NCBI RefSeq assembly: GCF_963853765.1
Contig: NC_088854.1
Coordinates: 45,136,001-45,200,000, forward strand
Direction: 5' to 3'
Source: Magallana gigas
Lineage: Eukaryota
Length of the DNA: 64,000 nt
Numbering within the stretch: position 1 is the first letter of the stretch; every line of letters starts with the position of its first letter. Made by a program: the position numbers and the translations under genes. The notes beneath the pieces were generated by a model, which worked only from the letters and a program-made list of their open reading frames with translations, ran no database searches and was not told the origin of the DNA. Below, in pieces: positions 20,140 to 59,833 of this stretch.

Positions 20140-20379
20140 TACTAGTTATGACAACTTGCATGTGTTCATTATTCTTGTAAAACTGTTTGTACACGACATT
20201 AAAAAAATTATTGACATATTAGGCTACACTTAAATAGTTACTCGCAATATGGAGGCAACATCTCATAGATTGTCACTTGCCGGAATTACATCGTAGATTT
20301 ATACAGATTTTTTTTTACTCTGCTCGTTAAATATCCGGTGTATTTTGGTCTGGACAAACGCTACGTGTTGACGTTTAAG

Positions 20380-36574: not shown

Positions 36575-39500
36575 CTACAATTCACTAAAGTCGGTCCTTT
36601 CCTCCCTATTTCTTTGAGTAAAAGTAGTTTCATTCCACTTTATTGGTTGTCTACATCCCGGCCAATTATTGGAATTCTTTTTGTCGCCACCATCTAGATC
36701 TGTTGTTCGTCTATCACTGTATAAATCCATTCCTGTCAAATTATCCTCACTATAACTGTTCTTTTGTAAATTATCTTCGTCTCTGTCACCATGATGATCT
36801 GATTCTTGCTCACCGTAAGCGAATGTTTTTGGAATGGTTTCGTCACTGTTTCTTTGAATGTTTATAGCACGTCGATTTTCCGGACTGTATGCATTTTCTA
36901 AGTTGGTTTGGAGGACGTCCCCCTCACATTGATCATATGCTCTAAGGACGACGTTATTTGCATTTGAACAGGTTCCGCCCGTGTTACTCTCAACATCTTC
37001 TGCCGTTACACCGTTGTCTCGAGGAGTATCTCCATTTTGTTCATAGCTAAAAAAATATTTAATCAATTTATTTATTGCAATGCACATACGAAATGATTTT
37101 AATATCATCAACATCGATAATGCATTAATGTACGAACACCATTACTTTACGTTTCCACAATGTGGATGTAACACCATGACAGTAGAAATAAATCTAAACC
37201 TGTCTATAACTTTTGAAATTATAAATAGCTTCTTTTTACAAAATAAGATATTTTGTTAGTTAGATTACATTCAGTATAGAGATTAAAATTTGCTAAATGT
37301 GTCAGTCAAAAAAAAGGTTAAAATTTTTGTCACTTGCCTGAATAAGTCCAAATTAATGTTGTCGTTTTCTAGCGATGTTCGATAGTTTTCACTTGACGTA
37401 TCATTTGTATCATTAATCTCCCCAAATTCTCTTCCTCGTGTCCTATATTTGAAGCAACTTAATTATCACGGTACAGACACATAAAATAAACCATCACAGC
37501 AAAATGTAACGTCATTAAATATCATGCTTGTGAAAAATATCAAAATTTGAAGATGCTATAGAAGTAATTTAATTATTCATTAAACTTTAGAGTATACCTT
37601 CAATATTTATAATGATGCACTAATTCAAAACACTCACCATCGTTTAAGGCCCAATTTGATAAATGAAACTACCACTAATACTAAAACAACAATAGCACCA
37701 CAGGACGATCCTATATACAGCGGAAGATTCTCTGTAAAATAACAATAGTGTCAGGTGAGATAAATTCTTTTGAAAAACCCATATACATAATCATGCGAAC
37801 AAAATTTAAAACGGTCGATTGTAAAACATAATGAAGAAAAGGGGTAGATAAGGTTTTGAACTTAGCTTTGCTACAAGTAAAATAATCTTTCAGAACGACT
37901 TTATTCTTAAACTTAACTCATGATCGCATGCCAAGTGAATCCTTTTTTATGTAATGTAAACATCAAGCTTTGTACGCTTATACGTGTATATTTTAAAAAA
38001 TTGTTCACGTCAACAAATTAAATTGGTGGAAAGTTGATTGAATAAATCACCCACCCGCCTGAGATTCATTTGAGTTTGATTGGGTTGTGGTGACATTTCT
38101 TCTATCTGTACCTGTAATATGAATACATATGTACAAGTTACTATTATATATCAATGTAATAAACATTCTACTTTCCGAGAAAGTAACAATGATCAGAATA
38201 ACATTTGATTAACAGTGAAATACAAGTATTTTTCTTTTCAAAAGAATACTAGTATATTATAAAAATGATATCTATAATTAAGTATTTGGATTATTTTAAA
38301 ATTAATTGAAAAAAAACCTAGCATTTTACTCCATTTACTACCATGATATGTTACTCACCCACTTCAGATATAGTTGAATTTTTTGGAATTTGTGTGACAT
38401 TTTCACTATTTTTATCTGTAATTTAAATGAAGATGTTTATTTTTATACAGTATGTGACCAAGTTCGCAATTCACATGCTTCTTGGAGTTTTAGACCTACA
38501 AATTACGTTTACTGGTTCAGAATATACCAGATAGGATACGCTATATCTGACATTATTGTTATAGGCCACAGGTGCTTGTGGACAGGACCGTACACTACAA
38601 CCCCCCCCCTCCCTCTTTTCCAATTCTTTTTCTATATTTAAAAAAAAATATTTAATATCATTAACAACCCCTTGTATATGTCTCAAATCGAAAAACCAGA
38701 ATAATCACGACTCTGTGGCATTTTATATTGACACTCGTTTCCCTTATATATAAAAAGAAAGCTCTCTTTTAATATATAGGGGAGACGAGTGGCAATATAA
38801 AATGCCACAGAGTCGTGATAGTTCTGTTATTTTTCGACATATATAAGGGGTTGTTAATAATAATAAATTAAAGAAAAATAATAAAATATATAGACTAAAA
38901 ATTGGAAAGGGGGTGGGGGCGGCTGGGTAGTGCACGGTGCACGGTGCACGGTCCTGTCCACAAGCACATGTGTTATAGGCAACAAGAATTCAGATCGTTC
39001 TCGTCCTTAGGCTGATTAAATGATATGTGTACTGCGTAACAAAATGGATCATAACATTTCATGCATGCTTACTTTACTTCCACGTCAAAGTTATAATTGT
39101 TATAGAGAGTCTAGATGACTATCTATGTTTAAACACACGACTTGAAGACACTCAACTTACGATAGGTAGAACTAGCAATGTCTTTCAATTTTTCAAAATT
39201 TTGTGGTGAGAAAATTTTATATAAACATAATGTGATTATGAACTGAAAAGGAAAAGTTGCTGAGGTTTAAACCCTGCATGCCATGGTATATTGCAATGAA
39301 TAATGGGTATCGGGTCGATTGGAAGATGTTCATAGTGAAATACGAGATCATTTTTCTTGTGCCTGAAAGTTGTTTGAAACAAGATTAATGTAGTAAATAC
39401 TTCACTCACCTGCGGATATTGTTGACATAATTGGCATTTCTGTGATATATTCACCATTTCCATCTATAATATAGATACAGTTGTAACTGTTGTTTATAGT

Positions 39501-42500
39501 AAAATATGATCTGGAGTGAAAATTAAGTGGGTTAGTTTTTTCAGAAGAAATAATTTATTTTTTTAAAAACTTACTTATGAAACATAACGCAGAGTTCTTT
39601 TTACTACATGATCGGCTTTCTAGAGTACCATTGCACCCTAAAATTCTACAAAATGGTCGTTTAAATTTCTTTAAATGCTCCTGAGAATCTGAAAGAAAAT
39701 CAATCAAACCATCAGGCCCTAAAATTCATTTATTTGAATCTGTTCTAAAACCGAAAGAATAAATTTGCATAACAAAAACTATATTTAAATCGAAATCAGG
39801 TTATGTACCGTTTATTTTTCTCCAGATATATTCTCTAAATATTCCAGTCCAGATTGTTTCCGTTTTCATTGATTTCAAGGCTTTTGAAAGTAGGGCTGGG
39901 CTGTAGTCTCTTGGGTTAAAAATGGTCGCAGAAAGGTTTGAACATCCGTCTACAGCTTCACGATAAGTTGCATTTGCCAGATAGATGTATTCAACACTAT
40001 TATCTGTAGAAAAGAAGTTTAACTGTTTTACTTAACGTTTTTTGCATTTGATCAATTGTTTTGATGTCATTGTTTGATGATTGTTGAACAAAGAAAGATA
40101 CATAGTGTATCACAGTATAAACAAAATATGCATACCATGAAAGTATTGACAGATCACATGATGTTTTTCCTCACATGTTCTTCCTATGAATGTGTAACTC
40201 ATTGGGAATATCTCAAAATTAATGCTGGCTACAACACATTGCTTATCTGCATATTCCAAATCCTCTGCATCTATTTCAACATCTTTAACTACAAGAAAGA
40301 AAAAAAAGAAATGGTAATTTCATTTACGAAGTATTTTGTACCTCTAAGTAATTGCACCTAAAACTGACTTGATTCTTACTTGTGCTATACACTGCAACTG
40401 TTGCATTTTCTGAGTAATCGGGTAAATTTTTCTGATCTGGTAGACAGTGGCATTTATTGTTCTGTAAAAATATTAATTATTATTCTTTTAGAAAATCACA
40501 TTCAATAAATAATAATATAAATTATCGCTAAGTATTGTTGATTTTATTACATGTATTTGTTGCTAAATATTGTTGCGTATATGTTCTCACCAGTGATACA
40601 AAGTTAGGAAAGTCTGCGCATCGATTTGAACATTCATAAGCTTTTTCAGGATTTGTTGTTGGAATGAAGAAATTGTTATGAAATCCACCAATATACCCTG
40701 TAGCATTTGGTAAATAATTGAAGATAATGACGAAATAAAAAATAGTTTGAGTCAAAAACTGTTTTTAAGAAATTTGTTTACCTGTGTGCATAATCCAATT
40801 ACTGACAAATAATCCAGAATTTGTCCACGTTTCTTCCAAACTTTTGTTTTTCAGCATTTGTGTTACATTTGTAGCTTCCATTTCAGGCAAGTCATTGCTC
40901 CAAAGACTGCCATGGCTCTGTTGGCACTGAACAGCAGCATCACTATAGTTTTGATCTTGTATCACCTTGATTATATAATCTACATGTATCACATGACTTT
41001 CAGTGGAGGCTGTCGTTAAAGCGAGACTGGTGGTAGTTGTTGGAGCCGCGGTAGTGGTAGTAGTAGTAGTGGAAGTGGTTGTAGTGACCTTTTCTACAAT
41101 AAAAGGGGACATAAAGACAAGGAATCTACTTTATATGATCAAGAGTTGAAAATAAATCATTTACACTCAACGTTCGACACCTAAATCAACTACCAGTATT
41201 TGTTTATCTGTTTCAGTTTTGATTTGTTTTAAAATTTAAGACTCTTAAAGCTTACATAATGGGAAATATACACCTAATGTAAATAATTAAACAATAGAAT
41301 GCGTTCTTTGATGATTCATGTGGGATATAAATGTAGCGATTTTTGCAGAAAAAATGAACACAACCAGCTAACGCGGGTTCTCTATTTTTCTGCAATGTCG
41401 CTATTTTCATATCCCGCACAAATCACCAAAAATAGCATTTAATTGTTTAATTATCTACATTCGGTGTATATTTCCCCTTATGTAAGCTTAAAATCTGTGA
41501 CGTTCAATTTTCAATAAAACATAAGTTAACATTATCACGCGCTTTGAATAAATTAATTCTTGTACGATAAAATGAAACTTCCATTGCATTTTTATATGTA
41601 CTTTTCAAAACTATCTCAGAAAATTTTCCCGGCACAGTTTTTAGCACTATATTTCTGACTGCGGAAGCGCACTAAATAAAATATTCAATGGCTGTTCCAT
41701 CAATTATCGTCGGTCCTATGATACTCCAGGCCGTGCAGACTAATTATCAACGCTAACGCATCGTATCAACCTGGACAGCCTAGTGTCTTATACGACCGAC
41801 GAGTTTAAAAAATAAGCATTCAATGCAAATTGATACATATAAGAATTCTTTACCTTTTACACAAATGGAATAAGTTTTTTCTGTACAATCTGTCGTAATA
41901 ATTGTACCGTTTAAAAACATCTTTCTGCAGTATCCACCATCAGAAGCCCTATCTCGACAATCTTTAAAAAAAAAAAAATTATATAGTTTTAACTTATCAT
42001 TTCTTCTTTGAGTTTGAAGTTAATGACAACAATATTCTATTCAAATCGAACCTTTCCTTCTCAGATAATTTTTTCTGGTTATTGGTGTCCAGTACATTCC
42101 ATTTGCCACCCTACTATTGTATAGATGTAGATTGGAAAAAGAGGAAGCTAACGTGGCACCTTTATCGTTACAAAACGTTTTCGAATCTGTGAAATTCAAC
42201 AGCGTATGACTGGTAAAGTATAGAGAATCATTTGCTACAAAAAAAAAAGATTAAATGAGTTATGAAAATATATGAAGGTAAGTTCTGTTTAGATGAAGAT
42301 AAATTATCAATAAATTTATATTACCTCTTAGGCATAATGCTTTTAAAGATTCCTCACAATCTTTCATAGAAAGCAGATAGGAAACAGGGAAGACATCTGT
42401 ATTTATTACAAGTTGTACACAATCTACACCAACGGAAGGAGCAGTCGCTTCTAGTACATCTCCTTCCTCTTTAAATAAAATACAAGATTGTCATAATTCG

Positions 42501-45500
42501 TATGTAAAGAAAAATGATTATCAACAAAAGTAAAAATAAGACCTTCCAAACTGTAATTGAAATACTTACTTGATGAGTACAGAACAATTGTATGGTTTTC
42601 TAAGCTATCAGATCCATTATAAAACAAACTTGATATGTTGACACATCTGTTATTCTGTAAAATTTATTAAAATGCGTTTGAAATTCAAAGCAGAAATTTT
42701 ATCAATTATTTAGAAGAATTTATTACCAACATTTCCATGTACCTTTTAGAAATGTAATTTCATAAAAAAGTATTTACCATCATTCCGAAGTACCAACACT
42801 TCCGACACAATATCGCACAGTCATAGATATCCGTAACTTTCGACAAAGAAACATTCTGGAAATTAACTGAAAACGTCCCTGAAATTAAAGTAGTTTGCCA
42901 AAAGTGTAAATTAACAAAAACAAATCATTAGTGACAAATTGTTTAAAACATTTATTTGTTCTAACCAAGTAGGTACAAAACGTTGTTTCAATGGTCATTT
43001 AACTATACTATTTGGTTGTGGCGTCGATTATCAATTTTCACGCTGTTTCCAGGCTGATTTTACACTGTTGTAACAACGTTGAAACAACACAATGCCACAT
43101 CAGTGATTGAGTTAAAGGAAATAAATAATGTGGAGTTCACGCTGATTTTCATTTTAAAAGAAGCGTCCGTGCTTTAATCTTGGATGGCAATGAAAAAACA
43201 TGGACACGAATACAACTTGAGATTACAATTTTTGGAACCTTTTACCAAACGATTGTACATGGTACTTAAAATGAACTGAAAATCAGCAATCTCACTGCTT
43301 TGATTTTACAAATTCGGAATAACCTCGAGAATCAGTAATATTTAATTATGATATATTTTGCTCGAAACTGACAAGTTCTGACAAACATTTAAAACTGTTT
43401 TTCTGCCTTTGACTTTCCGCTAAATCACAAACTATTGACAAGCATCCCATGTCCATTGACTGGACGAATACGTGTTGAAATCTGTACAATTTAAGTTTTT
43501 AAAGCGGATGGTAAGTGTCAGAAGAATCTTAGCATAGTTGTGGGCATTGTCAGCAGATGTCAAACATCATAGAAAATACCTGCTTTTGTTTCTTTGACTG
43601 ATTTGGAATTTAGAAAATTCTGAATGAATTTAAAAACATCCCGATTTCAAATAACTTTCCAGTTGTAATGAATAATTTTGATCTGGGGGCATTTTTCAAC
43701 ACCGAGTATTGAAACCAAATGTGTTTGAATTAAGATCCTTAAAATTGTTGGTGGTAAATTTGTTGCATCGTGAAATTGGTTTCTTCGGTTCTAAAACAAC
43801 TCCATATTAAAAGTATATCAATGTTAACAGATTAACAGGTTTTCTTTTCTTCAAAAGAATTCTACATCATGGCACCTTCAGTAAACGGCTGGGGATTCAT
43901 TTTTTCAACTTTATTCGTGCTTATGTATGTAGTTTTTCTTAAAAACAGTAAGACCAAATGTAATCGTTTAAACCACTTTATTAATTCAAATACAACTTTT
44001 GTTTACTTTCCTTCTCTGTAAAGCTTTTAATTTTATGGTGTCATACACTGTTTAATCAACGTTTACGTTAGCACATGACTTGTTTTATTTCCCTAAGACA
44101 TAATGTTGCATTTCTTATACTGTACATCTAAGTGATTTTTTGGGGTATATCATTTTACCTTTGGAGTAAATTAAATAAGGATTATACATTTATACATAAG
44201 CAGGTATTAAACACTTTAACTATGAATATGGACGATATATGATATTCTCTTGAAAAATGTCGTGGCGTGATTTGCTTGCTTGGTACATGTAACAACTAAA
44301 GGTAAATTTTAATCATTTACAAAAATATAACATAAATGTATATTCAACGTCAGAAATCAACAAAAAATCAATGACCAATATAAGACACGGACATCGAATA
44401 AAGTCGACGTAATCAAACATTTTTTCTCTGACACTTTTGAATTGATATGCAACATTGTTTTGACACTTTAAAATTGTCGTTAAAAGTTTTATCATTTTAA
44501 AAATGTCATATATTTTTGTCATATATCAATAACAGACCTGCAGGTACAATCCAGGCTCCTGGGAACACTCTATAATTCAAGTAAATTTCAGTGAAATTTT
44601 GAGCATTCATTTCTTCAATTATATTGAAGTCGTTCTCGTCATTTTGGATTTCCTTGTCGTACAATGTATTTGACTTCAGACAGCAATCACTTGACGAATC
44701 AAACCAGTTCTTTTTATTCTTGTCTTCCAGGATTTCTTCCGTTGTTGTATGTACAGCTGTACCTGAATAACACTTTAAAATTTGAAGTGACTGTATGTTT
44801 ATTGATACTCCAGTAAGGATATGTTCAAGTGTGATATATTTTTTATATAATTCTCATCTTTCTCTCTTTCTTTATAAGAATCGACAATGGTATAGCCACT
44901 AAATTATGAGAAAAACACATTTTAAATCAAAAGGTCTATATACATTTGTATGTTTATATACATATATTTTATTGTTTAACAGTTGTGAATGGAAAAAAAA
45001 GAAATTATACAAAAATCAGAATAACCGTTAAAGGCATTTGAAATAAAAGTCGTTGTCGCCTACAAGCCGAATGAATGATTTATTTGTATACATGATAAAG
45101 TCAATCACAACATTTCGTGTCTGTTAAGTCTCAGTTATAATCCATACAGAGAATCTAGATGACAAAATATGTTAAAACACTCGAGTCTTAGACAATCAAG
45201 TTATGATAACTAGAACTAGCCATGTATTTCTCTTTGTGAAAAATAATTTTATAGCAGGATAGAAATCTAATATAAGAATGATGTGACTATATAAATCTAA
45301 TTTAAAATTTTAAAACCGAAAAGCCGAATTTTGAAAACGTTTTCACTACGCGACTTATAGTATTTAATGATGTTTTTGTTAATATCTATCATTATGTATT
45401 TAACATGTGGATCGGGGCAGTTGATCTTTGTTCATGTTAATATCCAAATTCCGTTTTTATTTTTCGAAACATTTTTGGATACGTTACCCACCCACTTGAG

Positions 45501-48500: not shown

Positions 48501-51171
48501 TGTCTCCTCCTTTTCTAAAATGAATGAAAATAAAACAAGTATCAAGTTGATTATCTCACAATATGAATCAATAATAATGGTAGATTGGTTAATTTGAATT
48601 ATAGTTATTCGCCTTAATTGACTTCTTTTTACTTGTTTGTATTCTTTAAAATTGAGTTGATAATTATATTTATTGCTAGGTTTTTAATGCAACTAATCAT
48701 CTTGAAAACATTGGCAAAAAGACTGGTAAAACAGTTTCAGAAGCATTTGATTTACAGGATAAAATATATCAAAGATCCTGCAAGTGTTCATCTTGTTTAG
48801 ATGACGCATTTATAGTTTGTTAAAACCTCTATAAAACATTTCCAAGCGATGTATTTCATACAATTTTACTATACCTTTTATACAAATGGAATATGTCTTT
48901 TCTGTACAATATGTAGTGACAATTGCACCATTTGAAAACATCTTTCTGCAGTATCCACCATGATCTGTCTCATCTTGACAATCTTTAAGAGAAAAATGGA
49001 TGATATAACTTCTAATTATCACTTAACATTAGGAGAAAGTATTTGAAAAAAATACCAGCACTATTCAAATTGAACAGAACCTTTCCTTCTCTGTTGATTT
49101 TTTCTGGTTATTGGTGTCCAGTACGTTCCATTTGCTGTCTTACTACTGTATAGATGCTGATTGGAAAAAGAGGACGCTAAAGTGGCACCTTTATCTTTAC
49201 AAAACATGTTCGAGTCTGTGAAATTTAACGGCGTTTGACTTGTGAAGTAGAAAGAATCATTTGCTACAAAAAGAAAAAAAGAAATACATGTATGCCATGA
49301 ATGATGCAAGATTTATTAATTCTTATTTTAATAACAAAAATACATACCTCTTAGGCATAATGGTTGTAGCAATTCCTTGCAATCTTTCACAGAAAGCATA
49401 TATGAGACAGGGAAAACATCTGTATTAATAGAGACTTGTACACAATTGACACCAACGGAAGGAGCGGTCGTTTCTAATATATTTCCACTCTCTAAAAATA
49501 CAATACAATGGTATAAAAAAGGATATTATTAATATTTTTATTATCAGTTTCAAAGGACAATAAACAGTTTGTTGATCAATACTTACTTGAAAAATACAGA
49601 TCAATCGTATGTTTACTTGCGCTCTCAGCTGCATGATAAAACAAACTGGATATGTTGAAACAACTGTTGTTCTGTAAAAATTGTACAATTTTATTTGATT
49701 GAAATCAACATTGCATTCTACATGTGTTTATATAATTCATAAAAATTGCGAGGGAATTTTGCAAAATGTCAATACAATATAATCATATTTACCATCATTC
49801 CGAAATACCAACACTTCCGACATAGTATTGCACAATCATAAATATCAGTAACTTCGGACAAAGAATCATTCAGGTTATAAATTGTGTACGTGCCTGAAAA
49901 GTTAATTAGTTAAAGTAAAAATATAGATCAATAATTCCTTTAACTAAAGTAATAAACATTTATTGGTTCTAATCCAGGAACAAAACATTATTTCAAAGAA
50001 GATTCGCGATTGATAAGACGATACATATTTATAATAGAGAAGTAACATTTTTGGACATTTCAGAAAGCCAACTATCTAACGAATTATAGAATATAATCTT
50101 ATAATTGGTAACGCAATGAGCGGGAATTAAAAAAAGGTCACATATTCTAACTGAGGAGGCAGAACGGCCTCATGTTTAATGGTTATACTTTTTACAAGGG
50201 TATGCTACTAATAAGGCAAATATCCATGGAATATGATAAAAAGTAACTATTTTTCAGCTTGATCAAAATCAACATGCGCTTTAGATTTAATGGTGTTATA
50301 AACAATGTCTTGATTTTTTTTTAAGAAACACGGAATCAAAATTTGAAGCTGTACCTATGGAATCAGTGTATGTTTCAGCCAGACATGGGCACATTACTCA
50401 AAAATGTAATCAATTAGTAATTGATTACAAAGGGGAATTTTGTGTAATTGATTATTAATCGATTACACTCATTTTTGTCCAGTAATCGATTGTAATCGCT
50501 TACTTTATAACATGCAATCGATTAATAATCAAATACTAAAAAAAATTCATTAAAATTAATGTGCATGGTACCTCTTTTGAACATATGTATCATATTTTAA
50601 AACTCTTTAAGTTAATTTGGTTTTAGAGTTAAAGGGGTATTTTCATTATGAATGATATGAAAATTTGAGACTTCATATTTCAATCTTCATAAGATAACAT
50701 TTTATAATTTCTACTGCTTATTCAAATGCCAAATTATAAGCAATTATATAGTCAGAGCTCTGTCATATAAATTATGTAAACAAGGGTTTTTTCTTGGAAG
50801 TTAACGAGTTTAGATGAAATATTGGCCTTGCGTCTTTATCCATCTTAATTATTCTGTTGTTATTGATAATATCTCGAGAATTGGAATTTGGTTAGAATTT
50901 TATAATTTTGAAAATATCATTGGCAATATGCAAAGAACTTTGAGGAAACCTTGCTTCATGATTTGAATGAATTGTGTTTGGAGCTTGTAATAATCATTGT
51001 TCCGATTTTTAAAATAGATCCTTCTTGGGGCTATCCTAATTGTTATCTAATCATTAGGGTAGTCACACCTCATTCACTGCTTTATGGATTCCTTACCCGA
51101 CTAGGACAAACACACTTAGTGACACTTACATACCCTTTTGTTTCTTTCTCTGGCAAAATAGACACAAAATT

Positions 51172-51210
<39 letters not shown>

Positions 51211-54200
51211 ATAATGGTCAGTAGCTAAGTGTTTTTTCTATGCTAAACTTTGTTAAATAATAAAAGATTCTGCAAGAAAGTGTGAAAAACAGAGTGAATT
51301 GATGATTTGATTATATACTCAATGACATGTGAACCAGTATTTATATTTTAAGTGAAAATGGAATGTCATAAAAATGAATATAAACAATTTTATTCAATGA
51401 CTTGTATTATAAACACACCTGAAGAATATATTTTCATACAATATGTGCATCACAATATTTTTGTCATTTATGTAAAGAGTAATCGAAAGTAATTGAAAAA
51501 GTAACTATAATTACATTGAACTTTTTAGCTGCAGTCGATTAAATTACGATTACAAGTAATCGAAAACCTCTTCGATTACAGATTACTATAAATTTCTTGA
51601 AAAGAGTAATCATTACAATCGATTACGATTACTCGCGATCGATTACGATTACCCCATGCCTGGTTTCAGCTTCAAGTTCAACATTTAATGCTCGAATTTA
51701 AACCGAAAGCTTACATTTATGCCAAAATAGCTCTGTTTTTGGCCAGATGAGCGTATAAGCAAGCTGTTGGTCTATTTACACGAACAATGTATTGCATGTT
51801 TTATCCAATTGAATTTTTAAGAATGTGTCGATTTTACAGCAATGAAAAAATGATGATACATTAGTAAATATTAGACACCAGAGCTGTGGATTAGGACGAG
51901 GGACAAGTCAAATAGAAAATTAATCAGTCGTCTTTAAATCTTTTGAAAATAAAAGGAAGGTAACGGTTGAAATATGTCTTGATATGTGATTTCCTTGCAC
52001 GGTCACCAGGTAAATTTGTTTTATGAAGAAACTTAATTTTTTAAACGTAAATTTATCGTAAAAATCAAACAAATGAATCAACATAGAAAGTTGACATATA
52101 ACAAACATTAGAATTCGAGAAAATCAAAGTTGAAATACTCATTTGCAGAAAAATTGAAACAAAATCGATGCATGTGACTCTCGGAAAGATATCTATTTTT
52201 TGTTTTATAATTCAACATACTTGTGGAAAATATTTAGTTTTCGTTTTATAGTTCAACAAACTAAAGGAAAGATATTTAGTTTTCGTTTTATATTTTAACA
52301 AACTAACCTGCAGGTACAATCCAGGGTCCTTTATACACTTTATTATTCAAGAATATTTCAGAGAAATTTTGGGCATTCATGCTTTGAATTATGTCGAAGG
52401 TGTCCTCGTCATTTTGGATTTCCTTATCATACAATATTTTTGACTTTAGACAGCAATCCCTTGACGAATCAAACCAGTTCTTTTTATTCTTGTCTTCAAT
52501 GGTTTCTTCTGTTGTTGTATGCAAATCAGTACCTAAAAACCATTCTTTAAAATTAGGCAATTCTACTAGTTTTCACAGAATAATTGTTGCATTCCATATG
52601 AAGAAAAATAAACCCAAAGTACACTTCGATGGTACTCTCCCGGAGAATTCTGTGGTTCTGAATTCTCAAATGTAATAAATTCATCCAATCATTCAAATTC
52701 TCATGTAGTCTTAAAAATAAATTTATACTTTTCGCCCCAATACACATCTAAGAAACAACCTACTCTCAGTAGAATATGTTGTCTGTGATCCTTGATGGTG
52801 CATATCCGTCCCTGTTGCACTCGATGTGAGAATGCTACAGTTGCTAGAAAAAATATTCATTTTGCAAGACAATGGATTCCAGGTCTTTCTTTCAATTACT
52901 CCAGTCCACACCGATATATTTTCTGCTGTGAATTGCGTGAAGGTTAAAATATTTTCTAAAGCTCCTGACTGAAAGTCTTCAGGTAAAAACAAATGAGCAG
53001 ATTCCTTTTTACAGTAGTGCCAACTCTCCATGAAATTTGTTTCATTGTCAGAAAATATGTATTTGATCTTTTTATCTGTGGAATGAAAAAGTGCTATATA
53101 CATGAATAGGTAAATATGATGGGTATTAAAGTTAGAACTTATAAAAGATTTAAGTTAAAATACCTGTAACTTTCTGGCAAATTATTGCAAAAGATTCGTT
53201 ACAGTACGTAGTGTGAACTGTGAAGGTGATTGGTCTAATTTCCATCTTTAGGTTGGCTACAACACATAGGTCTTCTCCCAAAGTATTAAGAGTGTCTCCC
53301 TGAAGGTCAGGGTCAGCATTGATCTCGTATATATGTTGACCTGCCAAAATTTGTATTATTTTTCATATACAACGTTTGAAAACAATAAGCATATAAAATC
53401 AAAGTTATAATTGGTTGAGAAACAAATAAACAAAAGAATCTTTGGACAATTTGCCAACTCTCGTAACTAACCACCATCAATCTTAATACAATACAGTAAG
53501 TACAATGCATGCACATCAATTCTAAATATATATGAACAGATTTATAAGAAACAAATCATAATTATTTATAAGAGAAATCAAAATCGGAGTGGCCTCTATC
53601 TGGTCAATAGTGTTTCATAAGGATAACTGTAAGATTAATTATTTCGAAATTTCAGTAAAAAGATCCCCTTCCCCTCTATTTGCTTGTTATCTGTTTACCT
53701 GTCTCTTTGTCAATCTGTATAGAAGGTTCTGCATTTCCTCTTTCACATTTGCATTTCAAATCCTTCGAATGAATTAAAAATGATATCGTTATACTTCACA
53801 TATAAGATGATAGCATATTCATAAAAAAAAGTTTAGGCATACAAAAGTCAATTTTTTTTAAACGAATATAAGTCGACTATTCTATAGATGGAATAAATAT
53901 TTCAGCTAAATGTACGCTATTCGTATACTGATTTTATCAAATATTTAACACTGTGTAAGATGTTAATCTCAAATTGCCCATAAGATTTACGAAAAAATCC
54001 TACCTGTTCTGTAAATGTTACGTGAAAAAACTGATATGCGTCACACTCCTGAGCACAGTTATAAGCTTTCAATAGTTTTTCAAAGAGTAAATGCGATGAG
54101 TTTAATCTAGTAGGTAAAGCTAGCCCAAAATCTACAATGAATAATGAATATGTTATATTGATATTTTTTACTACATTTTGAACGAACCATGACCCATAGA

Positions 54201-57200
54201 CCCTAGTATACAAGCTTAAATTTATATACCTTTATTTCGTTGTTAATAAAAGTTTTGTGTTTTTAACAACCTTAGCAGCCAAATGCTTGACTTAGCTTTC
54301 ATCACATGGACAGTTCAATGTTTTATATCATCATCATTGTCACCATCGTTGTTTTGACATTCTTTTTACTTATATTACTCTCTACAGAGTCACAAGAGTA
54401 ACACAAGTAAAATAAGTTGACTTGGTGAAAAAAATTCAAATGAAGAATAAATATATGCTCTAGAGAATAGAATAGAAATAAAAAAAAAGGTTTGAATGGT
54501 GTTTTGTTTTTAAATTCTTAAGTATAGACCCCATAGTGATTTGAAGGTAATACGAGGCCAATGTTAACAAAACATGTTGTGAGAGAAAACTGTCAAAAAT
54601 TGTGTTTCAAGGGCCCAAATCCTTCATTTTAAGATATTCAGTAAAAGCATCTAAATAGAATATATTAAAAGTGTTTTCACAATACGATCGCTTACTTATA
54701 AATGAGTTGCAAAATGTATATATGAAGTAGAGAAAGACTTTTGTTTAGATTAAAATGAATTGCTACAACTTATATAACTAGCATTAGTTGTGAAGATATT
54801 ATAAAACACCATAGACTTGAGATTCTTCTATGACATCAGAATCATACATATCGGGGAGCCCATAAAAACGTAGAATACAAAAAAATTTAGTAAAAACGTC
54901 TTTTCGAGATAAAAATAATACATTTTGCAATACAAAAATGTAAATTTGGTTTGATTTGCGCAATGCATGCCATTTTTTGATTTCTTTTTTATTCGATGAA
55001 TAATTCTCAAGGCAATGCCATATGTAACTCATGTAGGTGTTCGTTTTAGCTTGAATAAAAATATGGTTATATTTTGGGTTTTTAAATCGTAATTATTTCA
55101 TTCATTTCATATTGAACAGAAAAGTTTTCCTTTTTGATTTACATTTATTGAACATGAAATAATATACGGACATGAAAAATTGTACCTATACACGTTGTTT
55201 TGAACATTCTTAGTATTAGAGGTATCGTTAGATTTCCTTAATTTTATTCTAAATTATTATGGCTTGCAATATCTATGACAAATATATGTAATTAAAATCA
55301 TTAGATAGCCCTGAAGATGCATATTGTGATGAATCTTATTATTTGCAAGCTTGTCCTACTTCTATTTTGTAGTCTTCTCATCAACATTTCAAATTAACGA
55401 TGAAATTGACTTCTTCAAGATTTTCATTTGATGCTACATGTATAAAATCATTGTGATACAGGGATACTTAAAGTATCTTTTTAACACTATTTTCTCAATT
55501 AGATTCTTTGGTTAATGTATTGATTGACCATTTTATAACTAAATTTTTAAAATGAAACATTACGGAACTTGTACGATATCTATATCCTTGGGTCATTTAT
55601 CAAACAAATTAACCTTTTCCTATAGAAAACTAGAAACGGGATAATGAACCAATTTGGTTTACCGGGCACTTGTTACCAATTGTTGCCTTTAATATTCGAC
55701 AAGAATGCTAAAAAAGTAACGAAGTATTGTTATAACACGGTGCTCTGATTTTTTAATCGAATTTCTCTTTGTAAATGTAATTTTCCTTTAAATGCAATTG
55801 AAACACCTCATATCAGCAGATATACTGCTATATTTGTACCTACCCGATATCATTTAAATTGTGCAGTGAATTTTTACCAATTTAAACTTTTATTTGTCTA
55901 ATTGTGCACAGTAGGGGTCCGAGGAGCACTTGATATAATCTAGAGATTTAACATGTAACCCTGATTTAGGTTCCTATCAACAGGTAAATGTTTCAAAGCA
56001 ATAACGTTTTAAGAATTTGAATTAAGCAGCATGAAAAATGTTTTGAAGACTTATTTTAAACAGAGTTGAATCACGTTCTTTAATTGCCTTAACAATTCCC
56101 AAAAATAAGCATTGAAGCTCTCTGAAATTGGGATATTCAAATCTTTACTTGATAAATAAAAGTAATAATGAATTACACAATAACACAATTAGCATATCGA
56201 ACACGTCCAGCCATGAACAGTATCGTCAAATCTTAATGACTAACATCGCATTCGGTTGGTAAAACGTTGTCGATTTGCACTTTGAACATAATCAATCCCC
56301 TTTTAGACACTACTTTATTATCGACTTTTATGAATCATACCATGTGGTCATTCCATTGTAGTCACCCACTGTGCGTAAGAAATGCAATCAATAAAAAATA
56401 AATTGCAGAGTGTTATCTTATCTAAATTTATGAAGCTTACGTAACACATTTCAGCAATTTTGATTGACCCTGGCTATATTAATTGTAGGACTGACGTTCC
56501 TTCAAAGCATCCCAAAGAACGGTATAACGACACAAAGAGACAAAATATAACGAAAGGTATGGGTTAATACTCTTATCGTGCCGATGGAAAAAAGTCCAAT
56601 TTATCATTGCCCTGAATAAAAGGATTTTCATCCGTGTACTTTTTGTAAAAATTGCGTCAAATTGAAAATATCTTGAGCAACACCACTAAAACTAAAATAT
56701 GTTAAACAAAACATACAGGGTAATAATGCATTGCTGCACATACCTTTACTATTTGTAGAATTCTTTATCGAGCAAACATGCTGAACAAACAGAATATTGG
56801 CGGCATTCGATGAATGATCACATCCTTCTAAATCTTTCAGTTTAATATGGGATACATTATCGTGCCTACACATGTCTCCAATCCATGTTCCACTTTCAAG
56901 ATTTTCAACTAAACCATCTGTAGCATAAAACAAATTTTAAAACACACCAAAATCCGAAATGAAAAAAAACCCTCAAGTAATTAGAAGGAGAACAGATAAA
57001 ATATCACTGTATTCAACTAAACATCTTAAATTATAATCCTTAATCTTAAGAAACTCTTACAATGAATCTTTAACATTTAAGAAAATTTGGATAAATGAAA
57101 CCTTAAGCCTTGACCCTTTTTGTAAAAATATGCACATGTATAACGATCAAACAATCCTTTATCATTATGTTTCAGTTTTTAAAGTTTAATTGTTTTGCAT

Positions 57201-59833
57201 CAAAAATTTATTTCATGCAATTTTTCTCTGTTTAAGAAGAACATATTATATAATAACAAACAATCACTTTATCAATATTAATTAATGATGATATCATGAC
57301 GATCTTGCCCAAACCTTTGAAAATGTATATTACTTGTATTACTGAAACCTATTAACCTTCTTTCATTATCATCTTCTGTTATTTTCTAAGCAACCCCTTA
57401 CCCAAAATTACCCCTTTACAAGTACTCAACACAAAAACTTCTAATACTTAAATATAAAATATTTAAGACATCATTATTTTAAAAAAAAACCAAGCGAACA
57501 AAGCCCTTTAGATTGAATCAATGAGTTTTTCAGCTGACAAATGATATAACACATGAAAATTATTTATCAAATAGAAATAGTCTATTTCATTAAAAACAAT
57601 TAAATTTTAAAATATTTTTTTCATTTTCTTTCTTCAAAACGTGCAAAAAGTTAGAGATTATTTAATCTAAAAAGTGTCAATTTTGCATTTGACATTTTGA
57701 TAAGATACGTATAAGAGTTTAGTGTTATGTACTACTTAAAATGTTTGATAAAAAAGAGGATATCCTGACTCCTTGTGCCGTTACCTATAGAGAAGACGTA
57801 ACTAAACAAGACAATGTCAGACGTCGTGGGGATATTATCACACCCTATCTGCCACGTTTCCGGTGAAGCCTCGATGTTGGTCTGATCCAAAAAGTATGTG
57901 TAATCATTACAACATTTTGAAGCAACACAGTTTGTTAAACAAGTACATTAGTGAAAAATTGAATAAATCTATGTCAACGAAAAAATGAGAAAAATATTAA
58001 AATTCAATTTATTTTGAATAATGTTTTGTAATAAAGCACTGCACATTTTGGTTTGTTATATGAAATTTGAAAAGCCTTTTGTAGATCATCAGGTTTTAGC
58101 AGAAATATTTTAATTAAACATATTTTGGGGAAAACAATGTCATAACGATGCTTGACATGTATTCTCTTTCTTACCAAAGAGTTCCTAATGCAGGTTTGAC
58201 AGAGATCAAACATCTCCCTTAGGTAAACACCAACTACTTCTCCATAGGAAACTGCAAATACAGAAGTTATTTCTTAGTAGAACAATTACAAGAATAAGAA
58301 AATCGATTTCACATTTATTTAATCTTACCAGATTCTACGTACGAAATACAGCTCTGGAGAGGATGCTCAAAGGTATTATTGCTAGTATCACTATACATAT
58401 CCGGAAGAGGGATACTACCACTACTATATTTTGTTTGAATCCACAAAGTTTTGTTAGCAATCAAATACTGTTCTTCTTGTAACAAAGCGAAACCATTTCC
58501 AATTAGAGTGCAAGTAAAAACTAAAACTAAAAAAAAGAGAACATGAATAAGTATACTTTGAGACTAATGGAAAAAAGGAGAAAGAATATCAGGGAAATGA
58601 ATTAAACGTGTTGTTATTAATGCAGTGTTTAACCAATGTAACTTATAACTAATTTTGCCGCAATTTTTTTTTAAAGAACAATGTATGAACTGTAAAGGAG
58701 CTTCCGTAAGTGTTTTCTTAGATAGAGGTGATTAATTGTGGGTTTATGAAGTTTTGGCCAAGGATCTTTTGTTAACCGCACTTTTTTTCTTCAAAAACTA
58801 CAATGATGATTTGTAAAATTCAATATGTACAAATGTGTGAATAAAGTTTAAGTTCTGAAAAAAGAAAGAAAGAAAGTTAAATAAAGAGAGAGATAGATAG
58901 ACAGATATTGCAATTAATTTGATTACGGTATATTTACACACTACGTATAATTCTATCTATTTCTTACGGAAATTTGCTGTATTTTACAGCTATATATAAC
59001 TTGACAGACTGAAATAAACAGATCCACTTAAAACCAGTGTACCGATCGGTCGAAACCTTCACAGCACTTTAAGAAAAATCACGGACTGCACATAAAAAAT
59101 CTCGATGATGTCAGACTCAAATTCCCATAGACGGTTTGGCTATTTCTTTTATCTAACTTACTGATGTACATCTCACCCTATTCCGGATATATTGAAATTC
59201 AGGAGACCATGCAAATTATTTCAATATATCCGTATTTCAATATAAGCGAAGTTGACTGACGTGAAGCCGTATCCTTAATAAACAATACACTTGCTAATCA
59301 CTCTTTAATTCTTTGGCAATTGACATTTGCTACATTTTATCTGATATACATATATGTACCTGATTTGATATTAATATAATTATTGGGAAGAAGAAATAAT
59401 GACGGGAAGGCCAAATGATAGAGCAGATACATAATTATTATCTGAAACACGTACAACTACATTCCTTATTTTCACCAATTTGATAAACTACGTGAACTTT
59501 TGGGAACCACTGATTATAAGATAGATATGGATCGATAACGAAACAAACATCGACAAAAATCTCGTCAAAAAGTGTACTCTTTCAATCTTTTTAGATATAA
59601 CAGATTAACTTACAATGTTTAGTCAATGTCAAATATTCCACAGCATGATTTTAGAGTATTCTTGGATTTTAAAATATTCCTATAGTCGTGGTTTTGATTG
59701 TCAGAAAAGTTACAAAGTATTGATTGTTAGAAAAATTACAAGGATATACTAATATTTTTACATGTTACAATAAAAATAAATTGTATTTACCTGATGTAGT
59801 AAAACATGTTTTCCCAAATTTGTGATAATTCAT
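36575..59833 (-). CDS. Large type I membrane protein with tandem C-type-lectin-like and WSC-like modules (about 1,944 aa, 40 coding exons)
   Basis: Exons 5'->3': 59791-59833, 58329-58520, 58175-58251, 57785-57881, 56744-56917, 54022-54131, 53699-53762, 53164-53340, 52764-53075, 52308-52532, 49793-49893, 49587-49671, 49348-49491, 49081-49263, 48875-48982, 48128-48514, 47925-48031, 47737-47818, 47483-47635, 46670-46864, 45763-45876, 45492-45548, 44538-44762, 42778-42878, 42570-42654, 42325-42468, 42052-42234, 41854-41961, 40782-41093, 40591-40697, 40380-40461, 40136-40288, 39809-40003, 39575-39688, 39410-39463, 38359-38415, 38055-38111, 37638-37731, 37338-37442, 36575-37046. All junctions are phase-compatible; total 5,835 nt. 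Signal-like N-terminus MNYHKFGKTCFTTSVFTCTLIGNGFA; one TM segment LYIGSSCGAIVVLVLVVVSFI-KLGLKRW. The 5' exons are less certain than the duplicated core. Confidence 0.75.
38567..38972. mobile_element. 406-bp foldback element with 8-bp TSD (P/Galileo-like)
   Basis: TTATAGGC at 38559-38566 and 38973-38980. Ends CACAGGTGCTTGTGGACAGGACCGT / ACGGTCCTGTCCACAAGCACATGTG. Arms pair imperfectly inward to a centre near 38760. Confidence 0.85.
41246..41491. repeat. ~245-bp imperfect foldback (palindromic dispersed repeat)
   Basis: AAGCTTACATAATGGGAAATATACACCTAATGTA pairs with TACATTCGGTGTATATTTCCCCTTATGTAAGCTT. Inner arms AATTAAACAAT...TTGCAGAAAAA / TTTTTCTGCAA...ATTGTTTAATT. Confidence 0.75.
50380..51662. 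mobile_element. hAT-type non-autonomous element (1,283 bp) containing a (TC)n tract
   Basis: Perfect 8-bp TSD GTTTCAGC (50372-50379, 51663-51670). TIRs CAGACATGGG / CCCCATGCCTG. Subterminal GATTAC/GTAATC arrays. Confidence 0.88.
54229..56372 (-). pseudogene. Probable decayed lectin-module exons inside the lectin/WSC gene
   Basis: Fragments with in-frame stops or frameshifts follow good acceptors: VGDYNGMTTWYDS*...SWLDVF (about 56150-56372), DYIKCSSDPYCAQLDK*...HCTI* (about 55843-55939), ECQNNDG...KSSIWL (about 54229-54382). They resemble the intact module halves. Confidence 0.4.

What the first reader, a model, noticed from the sequence alone, without database searches (positions are those of the whole stretch)
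36575..59833. Giant lectin receptor whose C-type-lectin-like domains are alternately split by an inserted WSC-like module
Seen: the exons splice into one frame of about 1,944 aa with a signal peptide, about 9 lectin-like modules, a stalk, one TM segment and a tail. Two module types alternate. Type Y has an N-half exon (e.g. ATYREAVDGCSNLSATI...IWTGIF) then a C-half exon (FCRILGCNGTLESRSCSKKNSALC). Type X has the same halves with two extra exons between them (GYIGGF...AYECSNRCADFPNFVSL and NNKCHCLP...VAVYST), whose C-x3-C...C-x-C spacing is WSC-like. Established: CTLDs have a W/Y-x2-A-x3-C N-terminus and C...C...C C-terminus; WSC domains are linked to carbohydrate binding. No EPN/QPD or WND motif was seen in the intact modules, so canonical Ca-dependent sugar binding is unlikely. 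Inference: WSC is nested inside the CTLD fold, roughly where the long-loop region lies, giving a composite glycan-sensing unit repeated in a mannose-receptor-sized surface protein. I know of no formal description of this architecture but cannot search for one.
Basis: partly seen in the sequence, partly recalled or inferred. Interest (0 to 1): 0.8.

Follow-up and report, generated by a model that had tools for sequence, protein, structure and literature searches.

The report
Oyster lectin-repeat receptor with nested modules
This is a real, spliced oyster gene for a very large cell-surface protein built from about ten short lectin-type domains. Every second domain has a small WSC/Apple-type module in the place where such domains normally carry their calcium and sugar-binding loop, a layout I found described nowhere, and its function is untested.

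Summary
On the minus strand, 35 GT-AG exons from 56917 to 36578 join into one open frame of 1,776 codons. Public RNA data confirm 11 introns and two further junctions in the 3' half.

The protein alternates two module types, X and Y.
- **Y modules** are compact C-type-lectin-like domains (CTLDs) without the long loop. Their profile hits only CTLD chains in the PDB (best E 4e-4).
- **X modules** have the same two halves with a two-exon, phase 1-1 cassette of 62-64 residues between them. A weak AlphaFold model of the Saccostrea ortholog's X module matches almost only CTLDs, over both halves.
- **The insert**, folded alone, is a helix tied to a hairpin by C-x3-C...C-x-C. It matches mostly PAN/Apple and WSC domains.

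The insert lacks four of WSC's eight cysteines and the CGG motif, and it fails Pfam's WSC threshold. It is therefore a truncated WSC-like core, not a WSC family member. No EPN, QPD or WND motif occurs.

The four-module block is duplicated in frame, with dN/dS 0.35 between copies. Relatives appear only in oysters.

The 5' exons and unit 1 splicing were not checked against RNA. Sugar binding is not shown. The scan noted this same stretch before (s1-403320), not other DNA.

The parts
44538..44762 (-). Unit 2, module A (X type), CTLD N-half exon (225 nt, phase 1-1)
   Evidence: The donor junction 44537|42877 is seen in RNA contigs. The upstream junction to 45492 comes from loose read ends. The frame is open.
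42778..42878 (-). Module A insert exon 1 (101 nt, phase 1-0), carrying C-x3-C-x2-C
   Evidence: Both borders are RNA joints. Reading frame.
42570..42654 (-). Module A insert exon 2 (85 nt, phase 0-1)
   Evidence: Both borders are RNA joints. Reading frame.
42325..42468 (-). Module A CTLD C-half exon (144 nt)
   Evidence: Both borders are RNA joints.
42052..42234 (-). Module B (Y type) CTLD N-half exon (183 nt)
   Evidence: RNA joint 42234|42325, and contig pieces covering 42052-42234. It is part of profile A4, which hits solved CTLDs.
41854..41961 (-). Module B CTLD C-half exon (108 nt)
   Evidence: RNA joint 41093|41854. The 41961 acceptor is inferred from an AG and from the length arithmetic of the 923-nt contig.
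40782..41093 (-). Thr-rich mucin-like stalk plus module C (X type) CTLD N-half (312 nt)
   Evidence: RNA joints on both sides.
40591..40697 (-). Module C insert exon 1 (107 nt, phase 1-0): Y-x-G-G-F ... C-x3-C
   Evidence: RNA joints. Aligned in A3.
40380..40461 (-). Module C insert exon 2 (82 nt, phase 0-1): C-x-C plus a final strand
   Evidence: RNA joints. Aligned in A3.
40136..40288 (-). Module C CTLD C-half exon (153 nt)
   Evidence: RNA joints.
39809..40003 (-). Module D (Y type) CTLD N-half exon (195 nt)
   Evidence: RNA joints. Part of profile A4.
39575..39688 (-). Module D CTLD C-half exon (114 nt)
   Evidence: RNA joints.
39410..39463 (-). Stalk exon (54 nt)
   Evidence: RNA joint 39463|39575, and a loose end at 39410 that leads to 38415.
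38359..38415 (-). Stalk exon (57 nt), the end of the duplicated unit
   Evidence: The start is fixed by the loose-end sequence of the reads. The donor is inferred.
45492..45548 (-). 57-nt linker exon joining unit 1 to unit 2
   Evidence: The 3' border is fixed by five raw reads whose loose end matches 45493-45522. The acceptor is inferred.
45763..52532 (-). Unit 1, the older tandem copy of modules A-B-C-D. It has 12 exons with hi-lo coordinates 52532-52308, 49893-49793, 49671-49587, 49491-49348, 49263-49081, 48982-48875, 48514-48128, 48031-47925, 47818-47737, 47635-47483, 46864-46670 and 45876-45763.
   Evidence: Ten of the twelve unit 2 exon lengths are matched and verified (the stalk exon C_N is longer; A_N's 225 nt is my own count after its acceptor was re-placed), and all borders are AG/GT. 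Exon identity to unit 2 is 82% at nucleotide level, with dN/dS 0.35. Not checked against RNA.
52764..54131 (-). Modules X0 and Y0. X0 has insert exons 54131-54004 and 53762-53699 and C-half 53340-53164. Y0 is a single exon, 53075-52764, with a shortened C-half.
   Evidence: Collinear with Saccostrea protein P0007 residues 242-410. Splice sites. Open frame. Not checked against RNA.
56744..56917 (-). Probable N-half exon of X0 (174 nt, phase 1-1)
   Evidence: Splice sites and phase only. The assignment is weak.
57785..59833 (-). Putative 5' exons: the ATG exon 59833-59791, a hydrophobic leader exon ending at 58329, and a Cys-rich exon ending at 57785
   Evidence: Splice-site logic only. No homology and no RNA check.
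38055..38105 (-). Probable third stalk exon (51 nt)
   Evidence: Similar to the 57-nt stalk exons, with AG/GT borders and matching phase. Inferred.
37638..37731 (-). Transmembrane exon, with a hydrophobic run of about 22 residues
   Evidence: Sequence and phase-consistent splice sites.
36578..37046 (-). Last coding exon: an acidic cytoplasmic tail of about 155 residues ending in -S-E-L, with the stop codon at 36578-36580
   Evidence: Open frame and phase. No Pfam family matched.

Best explanation
**What it is.** The gene encodes a lineage-restricted (oyster) type I membrane protein of roughly 1,800-1,950 residues. Its ectodomain is a chain of ten compact C-type-lectin-like domains (CTLDs). They lack the long loop region, and so lack the Ca2+/sugar site.

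**The nested module.** In every second CTLD, a 62-64-residue disulfide-bonded module sits between strand beta2 (the WIGL-like W-x-x-G) and strand beta3.
- It has the PAN/Apple-WSC core type: one helix pinned by two disulfides to a beta-hairpin, plus one more strand.
- It is encoded by a two-exon cassette that enters and leaves in phase 1.
- The position is exactly where canonical CTLDs carry the long loop.
- The layout fits insertion of a symmetrical exon cassette into the phase-1 intron that splits the CTLD (inferred).

**Other features.** Thr-rich mucin-like stalks separate module pairs. A four-module block was duplicated in frame, and both copies remain under purifying selection.

**Likely function (inferred, untested).** It is probably a multivalent, Ca2+-independent surface binding or adhesion receptor. 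The CTLD would serve as a rigid scaffold and the nested WSC/PAN-like lobe as the ligand-contact surface, held where CTLDs normally bind ligand. The acidic tail with a C-terminal S-x-L may link it to cytoplasmic scaffold proteins.
For: **Shown: gene and splicing**
- The spliced single transcript and open frame are supported by RNA and assembly checks.

**Shown: Y modules are CTLDs**
- Profile A4 hits 55 distinct PDB sequences, all CTLDs. The best are SRCL at E 3.9e-4 and DEC-205 at 0.002.
- In the printed alignments to the two best chains, a gap of about 24-27 residues in the query falls exactly at the long loop.
- Six of 12 Y pieces touch Pfam Lectin_C sub-threshold.

**Shown: X modules**
- The AlphaFold model of the ortholog's X module (pLDDT 53) matches CTLDs in nearly all of the top 50 VIA rows. 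Z is 3.4-5.3, with 69-102 residues aligned (mostly 84-100) across model range 1-184, so both halves are used and the insert is skipped.
- The X N-half profile weakly hits CTLDs of PLA2R, FcRY, mannose receptor and TC14.
- X and Y halves align in register.

**Shown: the insert**
- The insert-only model has pLDDT 67, about 83 in its core. The C-x3-C lies on the helix and the C-x-C on a strand.
- About 17-18 of the top 22 VIA rows are PAN/Apple/WSC domains: SML-2 Z 4.3, TgMIC4, Wsc1 Z 3.8, kallikrein and FXI apple domains, plasminogen, HGF N domain, MANEC, and Kremen1 WSC Z 3.0.
- The best Foldseek TM-score is to yeast Wsc1.
- The same double helix-to-strand disulfide is the conserved core of WSC and PAN domains (PMC9024836).

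**Shown: conservation**
- Cassette lengths of 186, 189 and 192 nt are all multiples of three.
- The Saccostrea cucullata protein P0007 has the same X-Y order.
- dN/dS between the duplicated units is 0.35, and 0.36 for the inserts alone.
Against: - The X model is low-confidence (pLDDT 53, pTM 0.39), and every structural Z is at or below 5.3. The tool notes that Z under 8 may reflect only a common arrangement.
- The models are of the Saccostrea ortholog, about 39% identical, not of this window's protein.
- Pfam finds neither Lectin_C nor WSC above threshold, either in single exons or in the whole ortholog.
- PDB profile searches with the whole X module, the insert alone and the X C-half gave only chance hits.
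- A-type inserts have a different cysteine pattern (C-x3-C-x2-C ... C-x-N).
- No binding, localisation or expression-pattern data exist, so the functional part is inference only.
- The 5' third of the gene was not checked against RNA.
Confidence: 0.65

Rival explanations
1. The 62-64 extra residues are not a nested domain. They are an unusually long, disulfide-stapled version of the CTLD long loop, and the PAN/WSC resemblance is a chance match of a small helix-plus-hairpin motif.
For: - All structural scores for the insert are low: Z at most 4.8, and Foldseek E at least 2.
- The top VIA row is an unrelated Bacillus protein.
- No PAN or WSC chain appears in the PDB profile search.
- The insert has only 4 cysteines and no WSC-specific features.
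Against: - The insert folds on its own with its best confidence in the core.
- 17-18 of the top 22 rows among 48,161 chains belong to one fold family.
- The cysteine spacing and placement equal the conserved WSC/PAN core.
- One ortholog insert gives Pfam WSC as its best hit, at E 0.016.
- The insert is a separate symmetrical two-exon cassette that is absent from Y modules.
Confidence: 0.2
2. The X modules are not single CTLDs. The 'N-half', insert and 'C-half' form some other arrangement, such as three small independent units or a new fold, and only the Y modules are CTLDs.
For: - X and Y halves are barely related by sequence. hhalign P for XN-YN is 0.006, no better than a mismatched control at 0.0064.
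- The X model has pLDDT 53.
- The X C-half profile finds no CTLD.
Against: - VIA-align matches to CTLDs span both halves, with 69-102 residues aligned (mostly 84-100).
- The N-half profile picks CTLD N-termini of the mannose-receptor family.
- C-halves of X and Y align with the three cysteines in register.
- Exon phases and positions are the same as in Y modules.
Confidence: 0.1
3. The locus is a decaying or mis-assembled repeat: a pseudogene, or an assembly-duplicated block, rather than one functional giant gene.
For: - Y0 has a shortened C-half.
- No annotated protein for this gene was retrieved.
- The 5' exons are unverified.
- Low-level RNA is present inside introns.
Against: - 1,776 codons are open across 35 canonical exons.
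- The two units differ by 18% at nucleotide level with dN/dS 0.35, so they are old, distinct and constrained copies.
- Reads join unit 1 to unit 2.
- DNA runs hold 96-99% of the sampled words.
Confidence: 0.05

Closest known systems
Mannose receptor family (MRC1, PLA2R1, DEC-205/LY75, Endo180, avian FcRY)
   Same: These are type I membrane proteins with 8-10 tandem CTLDs, most of them not sugar-binding. They are the best sequence and structure matches for the modules.
   Different: - The 5' exons scanned here matched no Pfam family, so no Cys-rich (ricin-type) or fibronectin-II head is seen.
- The CTLDs here are compact, without the long loop.
- Alternate CTLDs carry a nested module.
- Mucin-like stalks lie between module pairs.
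- The tail is long and acidic, with no FxNxxY-type endocytosis motif.
- No orthology is implied.
Compact CTLDs (Link modules, bacterial intimin/invasin CTLDs)
   Same: The CTLD core lacks the long loop region (definition in PMC9630629). One Y piece touches Pfam Xlink at E 0.11.
   Different: The sequence affinity here is to canonical animal CTLDs, not to Link modules. The modules are repeated ten times, and half of them are refilled with another module.
WSC domain (yeast Wsc1, human Kremen1; Pfam PF01822), a branch of the PAN/Apple fold
   Same: - A helix is tied to a strand by two disulfides, with C-x3-C ... C-x-C spacing.
- There is a Y-x-G-x-F-like first strand.
- There is fold-level similarity.
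- One sub-threshold Pfam WSC hit occurs, in the ortholog.
   Different: - It has only 4 of the 8 hallmark cysteines.
- It has no CGG motif and no long L5 loop.
- It is about 62 residues long, against about 80-100 for WSC.
- It is never free-standing here; it is always nested in a CTLD.
Bivalve CTLD proteins with an additional WSC domain (survey in PMC10140915), and polycystin-1, which carries both WSC and CTLD (the polycystin-1 point is my own knowledge)
   Same: A lectin-type CTLD and a WSC-type module co-occur in one extracellular protein.
   Different: The survey reports the WSC domain only as an additional domain recognised by domain models. Here the module interrupts the CTLD, and standard models detect neither part.
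Other notes of this scan on the same genome: CTLD fold carrying a nested PR/SET domain (s1-380920, s1-388552)
   Same: A CTLD serves as host for a domain inserted within it, in the same oyster genome (not checked by me).
   Different: The guest domain, gene family and cellular context all differ.

Membership tests
[quoted passage not shown] | Profile-level sequence similarity to known CTLDs | tested here: met
   - Y-module profile A4 against the PDB gave 55 hits, all CTLDs. The best E is 3.9e-4, with the alignment covering profile positions 3-91.
- X N-half profile A5 gave weaker hits: FcRY 0.01, PLA2R 0.02, TC14 0.2, mannose receptor 0.3.
[quoted passage not shown] | Pfam Lectin_C (PF00059) above the gathering threshold | tested here: not met
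   - Single exons gave no hit.
- The whole ortholog P0007 gave no hit at E<=1.
- Six of 12 Y pieces gave sub-threshold hits only, best E 0.028.
[quoted passage not shown] | Four core cysteines (C1 in helix alpha1 to C4 in beta5; C2 in beta3 to C3 after beta4) and a WIGL-like beta2 | tested here: met
   Alignments A4, A5 and A6 show one Cys in the N-half helix region, three in register in the C-half, and W-T-G/W-I-V motifs ending the N-half. The definition is from PMC9630629. The disulfide pairing itself is inferred.
[quoted passage not shown] | CTLD fold for the X modules (N-half plus C-half together) | tested here: inconclusive
   The model has pLDDT 53. Nearly all of the top 50 VIA rows are CTLDs spanning residues 1-184, but Z is only 3.4-5.3. 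Foldseek E is at least 0.1.
Canonical Ca2+-dependent C-type lectins (carbohydrate-recognition domains) | Long loop region with EPN/QPD and WND motifs | tested here: not met
   No EPN, QPD or WND occurs in the 1,776-residue model. Y modules align to SRCL with the whole long loop missing.
WSC domain (PF01822) | Pfam model above the gathering threshold | tested here: not met
   The only hit is the ortholog's first insert, at 15.9 bits against a cut-off of 27.8 (E 0.016), covering profile positions 20-63 of 82. The window's insert exons gave none.
WSC domain (PF01822) | Eight conserved cysteines (four disulfides), a CGG motif and a long L5 loop (PMC9024836) | tested here: not met
   The inserts have four cysteines, no CGG, and end about 20 residues after the C-x-C.
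PAN/Apple-WSC fold (superfamily level) | One helix attached by two disulfides to a strand of a small antiparallel sheet | tested here: met
   The insert-only model places C-x3-C on helix 21-30(31) and C-x-C on strand 43-47, with core pLDDT about 83. 17-18 of the top 22 VIA rows are PAN/Apple/WSC, Z 2.6-4.3. The scores are modest, so this counts as met at the level of a predicted fold only.
PAN/Apple domain (PF00024 and relatives) | Pfam model hit | tested here: not met
   No PAN family hit appeared for any insert at E<=10.
Mannose receptor family | N-terminal ricin-type Cys-rich domain plus fibronectin type II domain before the CTLD array | tested here: not met
   The 5' segments 58318-58563 and 57735-57947 gave no relevant Pfam hit. 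P0007's N-terminus also gave none. The 5' exon model is itself unverified.
Mannose receptor family | Array of 8-10 CTLDs, a single transmembrane segment, and a short tail with a tyrosine-based endocytosis motif | tested here: inconclusive
   The array and transmembrane segment are present. The tail is long and acidic with six tyrosines, none in an FxNxxY or Yxx-hydrophobic context.

The most novel reading that the evidence does not exclude
Oysters may use the compact CTLD as a general host scaffold whose ligand-binding loop can be swapped for whole autonomous domains. Here the guest is a minimal WSC/PAN module, repeated five times in one receptor; elsewhere in the same genome, by the scan's unchecked notes, it is a PR/SET domain. 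That would be a modular way of creating new recognition surfaces, distinct from the loop variation that diversifies CTLDs in other animals.
Probability: 0.3. Interest if true: 0.75.

Novelty: new variant of a known kind. Interest (0 to 1): 0.6.

Why it matters
CTLDs are among the most studied recognition domains. Their variety is normally explained by changes in the long loop that holds calcium and sugar. This gene shows a different route: the loop is absent, and in alternate repeats a small independent disulfide-bonded module sits in its place.

Standard domain models see neither part, so surveys of bivalve lectin repertoires would miss this family.

If the structure is confirmed, it gives:
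- a natural example of domain insertion into the CTLD binding site;
- a candidate Ca-independent, multivalent surface receptor specific to oysters;
- a test case for how exon cassettes in phase-1 introns create nested domains.

Tried and rejected
- **Pfam on single exons.** Scans of 20 stop-free segments at E<=10 found neither lectin nor WSC. The pieces are too short and divergent.
- **Word searches.** All three returned only genomic ORF fragments or P0007 itself. The length window excludes a ~1,900-residue protein. I suspect Thr-rich words crowded the capped candidate list. A blank here says little.
- **Representative search.** It found only 7 hits. One of them, P0005, is a Cys-free repeat protein of Lupinus albus (DUF6738). 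I rejected it as chance similarity multiplied by 12 repeats.
- **First alignment for folding.** A1 misplaced the second insert exons, so I rebuilt it without them as A2.
- **PDB profile searches.** The whole X module, the insert alone and the X C-half gave only chance hits, such as antibody YYCAR.
- **Saccostrea locus flanks (L004).** I found no conserved transmembrane, tail or 5' exons there. Only four P0007 exons could be re-mapped.
- **Ankyrin-gene synteny.** Synteny between the two species was not supported.
- **Longer Logan cluster members.** The four I read (P0012, P0019, P0022, P0031) are intron read-through ORFs, not spliced transcripts.

Full report
**Observation**

The cited peptides sit in stop-free minus-strand segments of a 31% GC region. 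I laid public RNA data on 39400-45399: contigs from three studies plus raw polyA reads.

- The reads gave 11 introns with GT..AG ends on the minus strand. Read direction fits a minus-strand RNA.
- The 13 exons so defined all have AG/GT borders and join into one open frame.
- Two loose read ends match elsewhere in the window and add two junctions: 39410|38415, and 45492|44762. The second ties the upstream copy of the repeat unit to the downstream one.
- The lengths of the 923-nt and 2,398-nt contigs equal the sums of the exon lengths. The stretch from 44719 to at least 39410 is therefore continuous mRNA.

Unit 1 (52532-45492) has the same exon lengths, phases and canonical borders.

A 35-exon model from 56917 to the stop at 36578 is open for 1,776 codons. 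I built it only inside scripts to test the frame and sent it to no search tool.

The first exons (59833-57785), the leader, and the path from 38359 to the transmembrane exon rest on splice logic alone.

**Anatomy**

The module order is X0-Y0, then [A(X)-B(Y)-Thr-rich stalk-C(X)-D(Y)-linker] twice. Short stalk exons, one hydrophobic segment and an acidic tail of about 155 residues follow.

- Y modules are two exons (N-half and C-half), 97-105 residues in all.
- X modules have the same two kinds of exon with two more exons between them.
- The extra pair enters in phase 1, has an internal phase 0, and leaves in phase 1. Its total is 186, 189 or 192 nt. This is a symmetrical cassette sitting in the intron that splits the domain.
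- The ectodomain model has 46 N-glycosylation sequons and no EPN, QPD or WND.

**What the modules are**

Pfam sees nothing, either in single exons or in the only annotated relative.

That relative is P0007, a 1,111-residue 'uncharacterized protein' of Saccostrea cucullata. It came from a search of 1.84 billion representatives that gave just seven hits. P0007 is collinear with the window, has the same X-Y alternation, and carries one copy of the four-module block.

*Y modules.* A profile of Y modules, built from P0007 pieces and window exons by reference, hits 55 distinct PDB sequences, all of them CTLDs.
- The best hits are SRCL at E 3.9e-4, collectin placenta 1, DEC-205, CLEC-2 and E-selectin.
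- The printed alignments, to the two best chains, run from the first strand to the last cysteine.
- A gap of about 24-27 residues in the query falls exactly at the long loop.

Y modules are therefore compact CTLDs in the sense of PMC9630629, without the calcium and sugar site.

*X modules.* The evidence is weaker but points the same way.
- The N-half profile weakly hits CTLD N-termini of FcRY, PLA2R, TC14 and mannose receptor.
- C-halves of X and Y align with their cysteines in register (P 7e-4). N-halves also align in register, but no better than a mismatched control.
- An AlphaFold model of P0007:813-996 has low confidence (pLDDT 53).
- Even so, its Foldseek list is dominated by CTLDs (E at least 0.1).
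- In an unfiltered comparison with 48,161 chains, essentially all of the top 50 rows are CTLDs. Z is 3.4-5.3, with 69-102 residues aligned (mostly 84-100) across residues 1-184. Both halves are used and the middle is skipped.

**The insert**

Aligned alone, the inserts share a Y-x-G-G-F-like start, C-x3-C, an aromatic position, C-x-C (C-x-N in A-type copies) and a final hydrophobic strand.

Folded alone (P0007:880-950 with 14 rows), the model has pLDDT 67, about 83 in the core. C-x3-C lies on a helix and C-x-C on the second strand of a hairpin.

- Foldseek finds nothing significant, but its best TM-score is to the WSC domain of yeast Wsc1.
- In the wide VIA comparison, 17-18 of the top 22 rows are PAN/Apple or WSC domains: SML-2, TgMIC4, Wsc1, kallikrein and factor XI apple domains, plasminogen, HGF N domain, MANEC and Kremen1 WSC. 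Z is 2.6-4.3.
- The Wsc1 structure paper states that WSC is a PAN/Apple fold whose helix is tied to strand beta4 by two disulfides. In Wsc1 these are C49-C69 and C53-C71, the same C-x3-C...C-x-C spacing.
- The same paper states that WSC is set apart by two further disulfides, a CGG motif and a long L5 loop (PMC9024836). The inserts have none of these.
- The only Pfam WSC signal is sub-threshold and comes from the ortholog's first insert (15.9 bits against 27.8).

The module is not a member of the WSC family.

**Nesting**

The N-half ends with the WIGL-like strand and the C-half begins just before the beta3 cysteine. In Y modules that junction is where the long loop is missing, and in X modules the cassette lies at that same junction. 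Together with the model matches spanning both halves, this supports a module nested at the long-loop position. The support is only at the level of predicted structures of an ortholog about 39% identical.

**Evolution**

The two four-module units differ by 18% in exon nucleotides. dS is 0.44 and dN/dS 0.35, with similar values for inserts (0.36), X halves (0.38) and Y modules (0.29). This is an old in-frame duplication with both copies constrained.

Saccostrea has one unit. Other hits are short host fragments from oyster-associated data. The family looks confined to oysters, within the reach of a single-sequence search.

**Likely function**

The protein lacks the long loop and its motifs, so classical calcium-dependent sugar binding is excluded for these domains.

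My best reading is a multivalent surface binding or adhesion receptor. The CTLD would act as scaffold, and the WSC/PAN-like lobe as contact surface, placed where CTLDs normally meet ligand. Mucin-like stalks would space the module pairs. The tail has no recognised domain and no ITAM, ITIM or FxNxxY motif. It ends in S-E-L, which fits a class I PDZ ligand pattern (that pattern is my own knowledge). All of this paragraph is inference.

**Comparison and novelty**

The nearest known design is the mannose receptor family, a type I protein with a tandem CTLD array. These are also the best matches. This protein differs in five ways:
- it lacks that family's N-terminal domains;
- its CTLDs are compact;
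- alternate CTLDs are interrupted by another module;
- it has mucin stalks;
- its tail is different.

A survey of bivalve CTLD proteins lists WSC as an additional domain found together with CTLDs (PMC10140915). A large study of domain insertions does not mention lectins. Searches for nested or inserted domains in CTLDs found nothing relevant. I rate this a new variant of a known kind.

**Limits**

- Both fold jobs used the ortholog, because a spliced model of this window has no reference.
- Structural scores are modest.
- The 5' third of the gene lacks RNA confirmation.
- The species label 'Pacific oyster' comes from the scan's own notes. Here it is supported only by runs labelled as oyster and by the Saccostrea relative.

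Noticed in passing
window 14410-15837 (+): An intronless 475-residue ORF made of ankyrin repeats (Pfam Ank_2, E 9e-42). An ankyrin gene also lies beside the Saccostrea relative, but the two showed no similarity in the part of that locus held here.
   Followed up: partly
window 20338-21195 (+) and 23679-24497 (+): Two uninterrupted TatD-related DNase ORFs (Pfam TatD_DNase, E 1e-57 and 3e-60) lie about 2.5 kb apart. They look like a tandem pair of intronless paralogues.
   Followed up: partly
window 43061-44445 and 41200-41600 (introns of the receptor gene): Low-depth RNA contigs lie inside two introns. Loose ends at 41289, 41449, 41491 and 43707 match nothing else in the window. These could be unspliced RNA, a transcribed repeat or alternative exons.
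   Followed up: no
window 48032-48127 (-): The 96-nt intron between the N-half and first insert exon of module C in unit 1 is stop-free and in frame. Many public ORF calls read straight through it (P0001, P0025, P0031). In some alleles of unit 2 the matching intron is open too (P0012).
   Followed up: partly
window 52183-52306: A 42-bp tandem repeat of three copies lies in the intron directly after the donor of the unit 1 A-type N-half exon.
   Followed up: no
window 38390-39015, both strands: Similar proline-rich ORF peptides on opposite strands suggest an inverted repeat or transposon remnant. It lies in the intron between the 54-nt and 57-nt stalk exons.
   Followed up: no
window 36578-36590 (-): The predicted protein ends in -F-S-E-L, which fits the class I PDZ-binding pattern (S/T-x-hydrophobic at the C-terminus).
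   Followed up: no
P0005 (Lupinus albus KAF1884353.1): A plant repeat protein (11 x DUF6738, no cysteines) scored E 1.6e-17 against the first insert exon, through a shared ...Y-x5-x-V-x-F-P-N-F... string. I took this as chance similarity amplified by repetition.
   Followed up: partly
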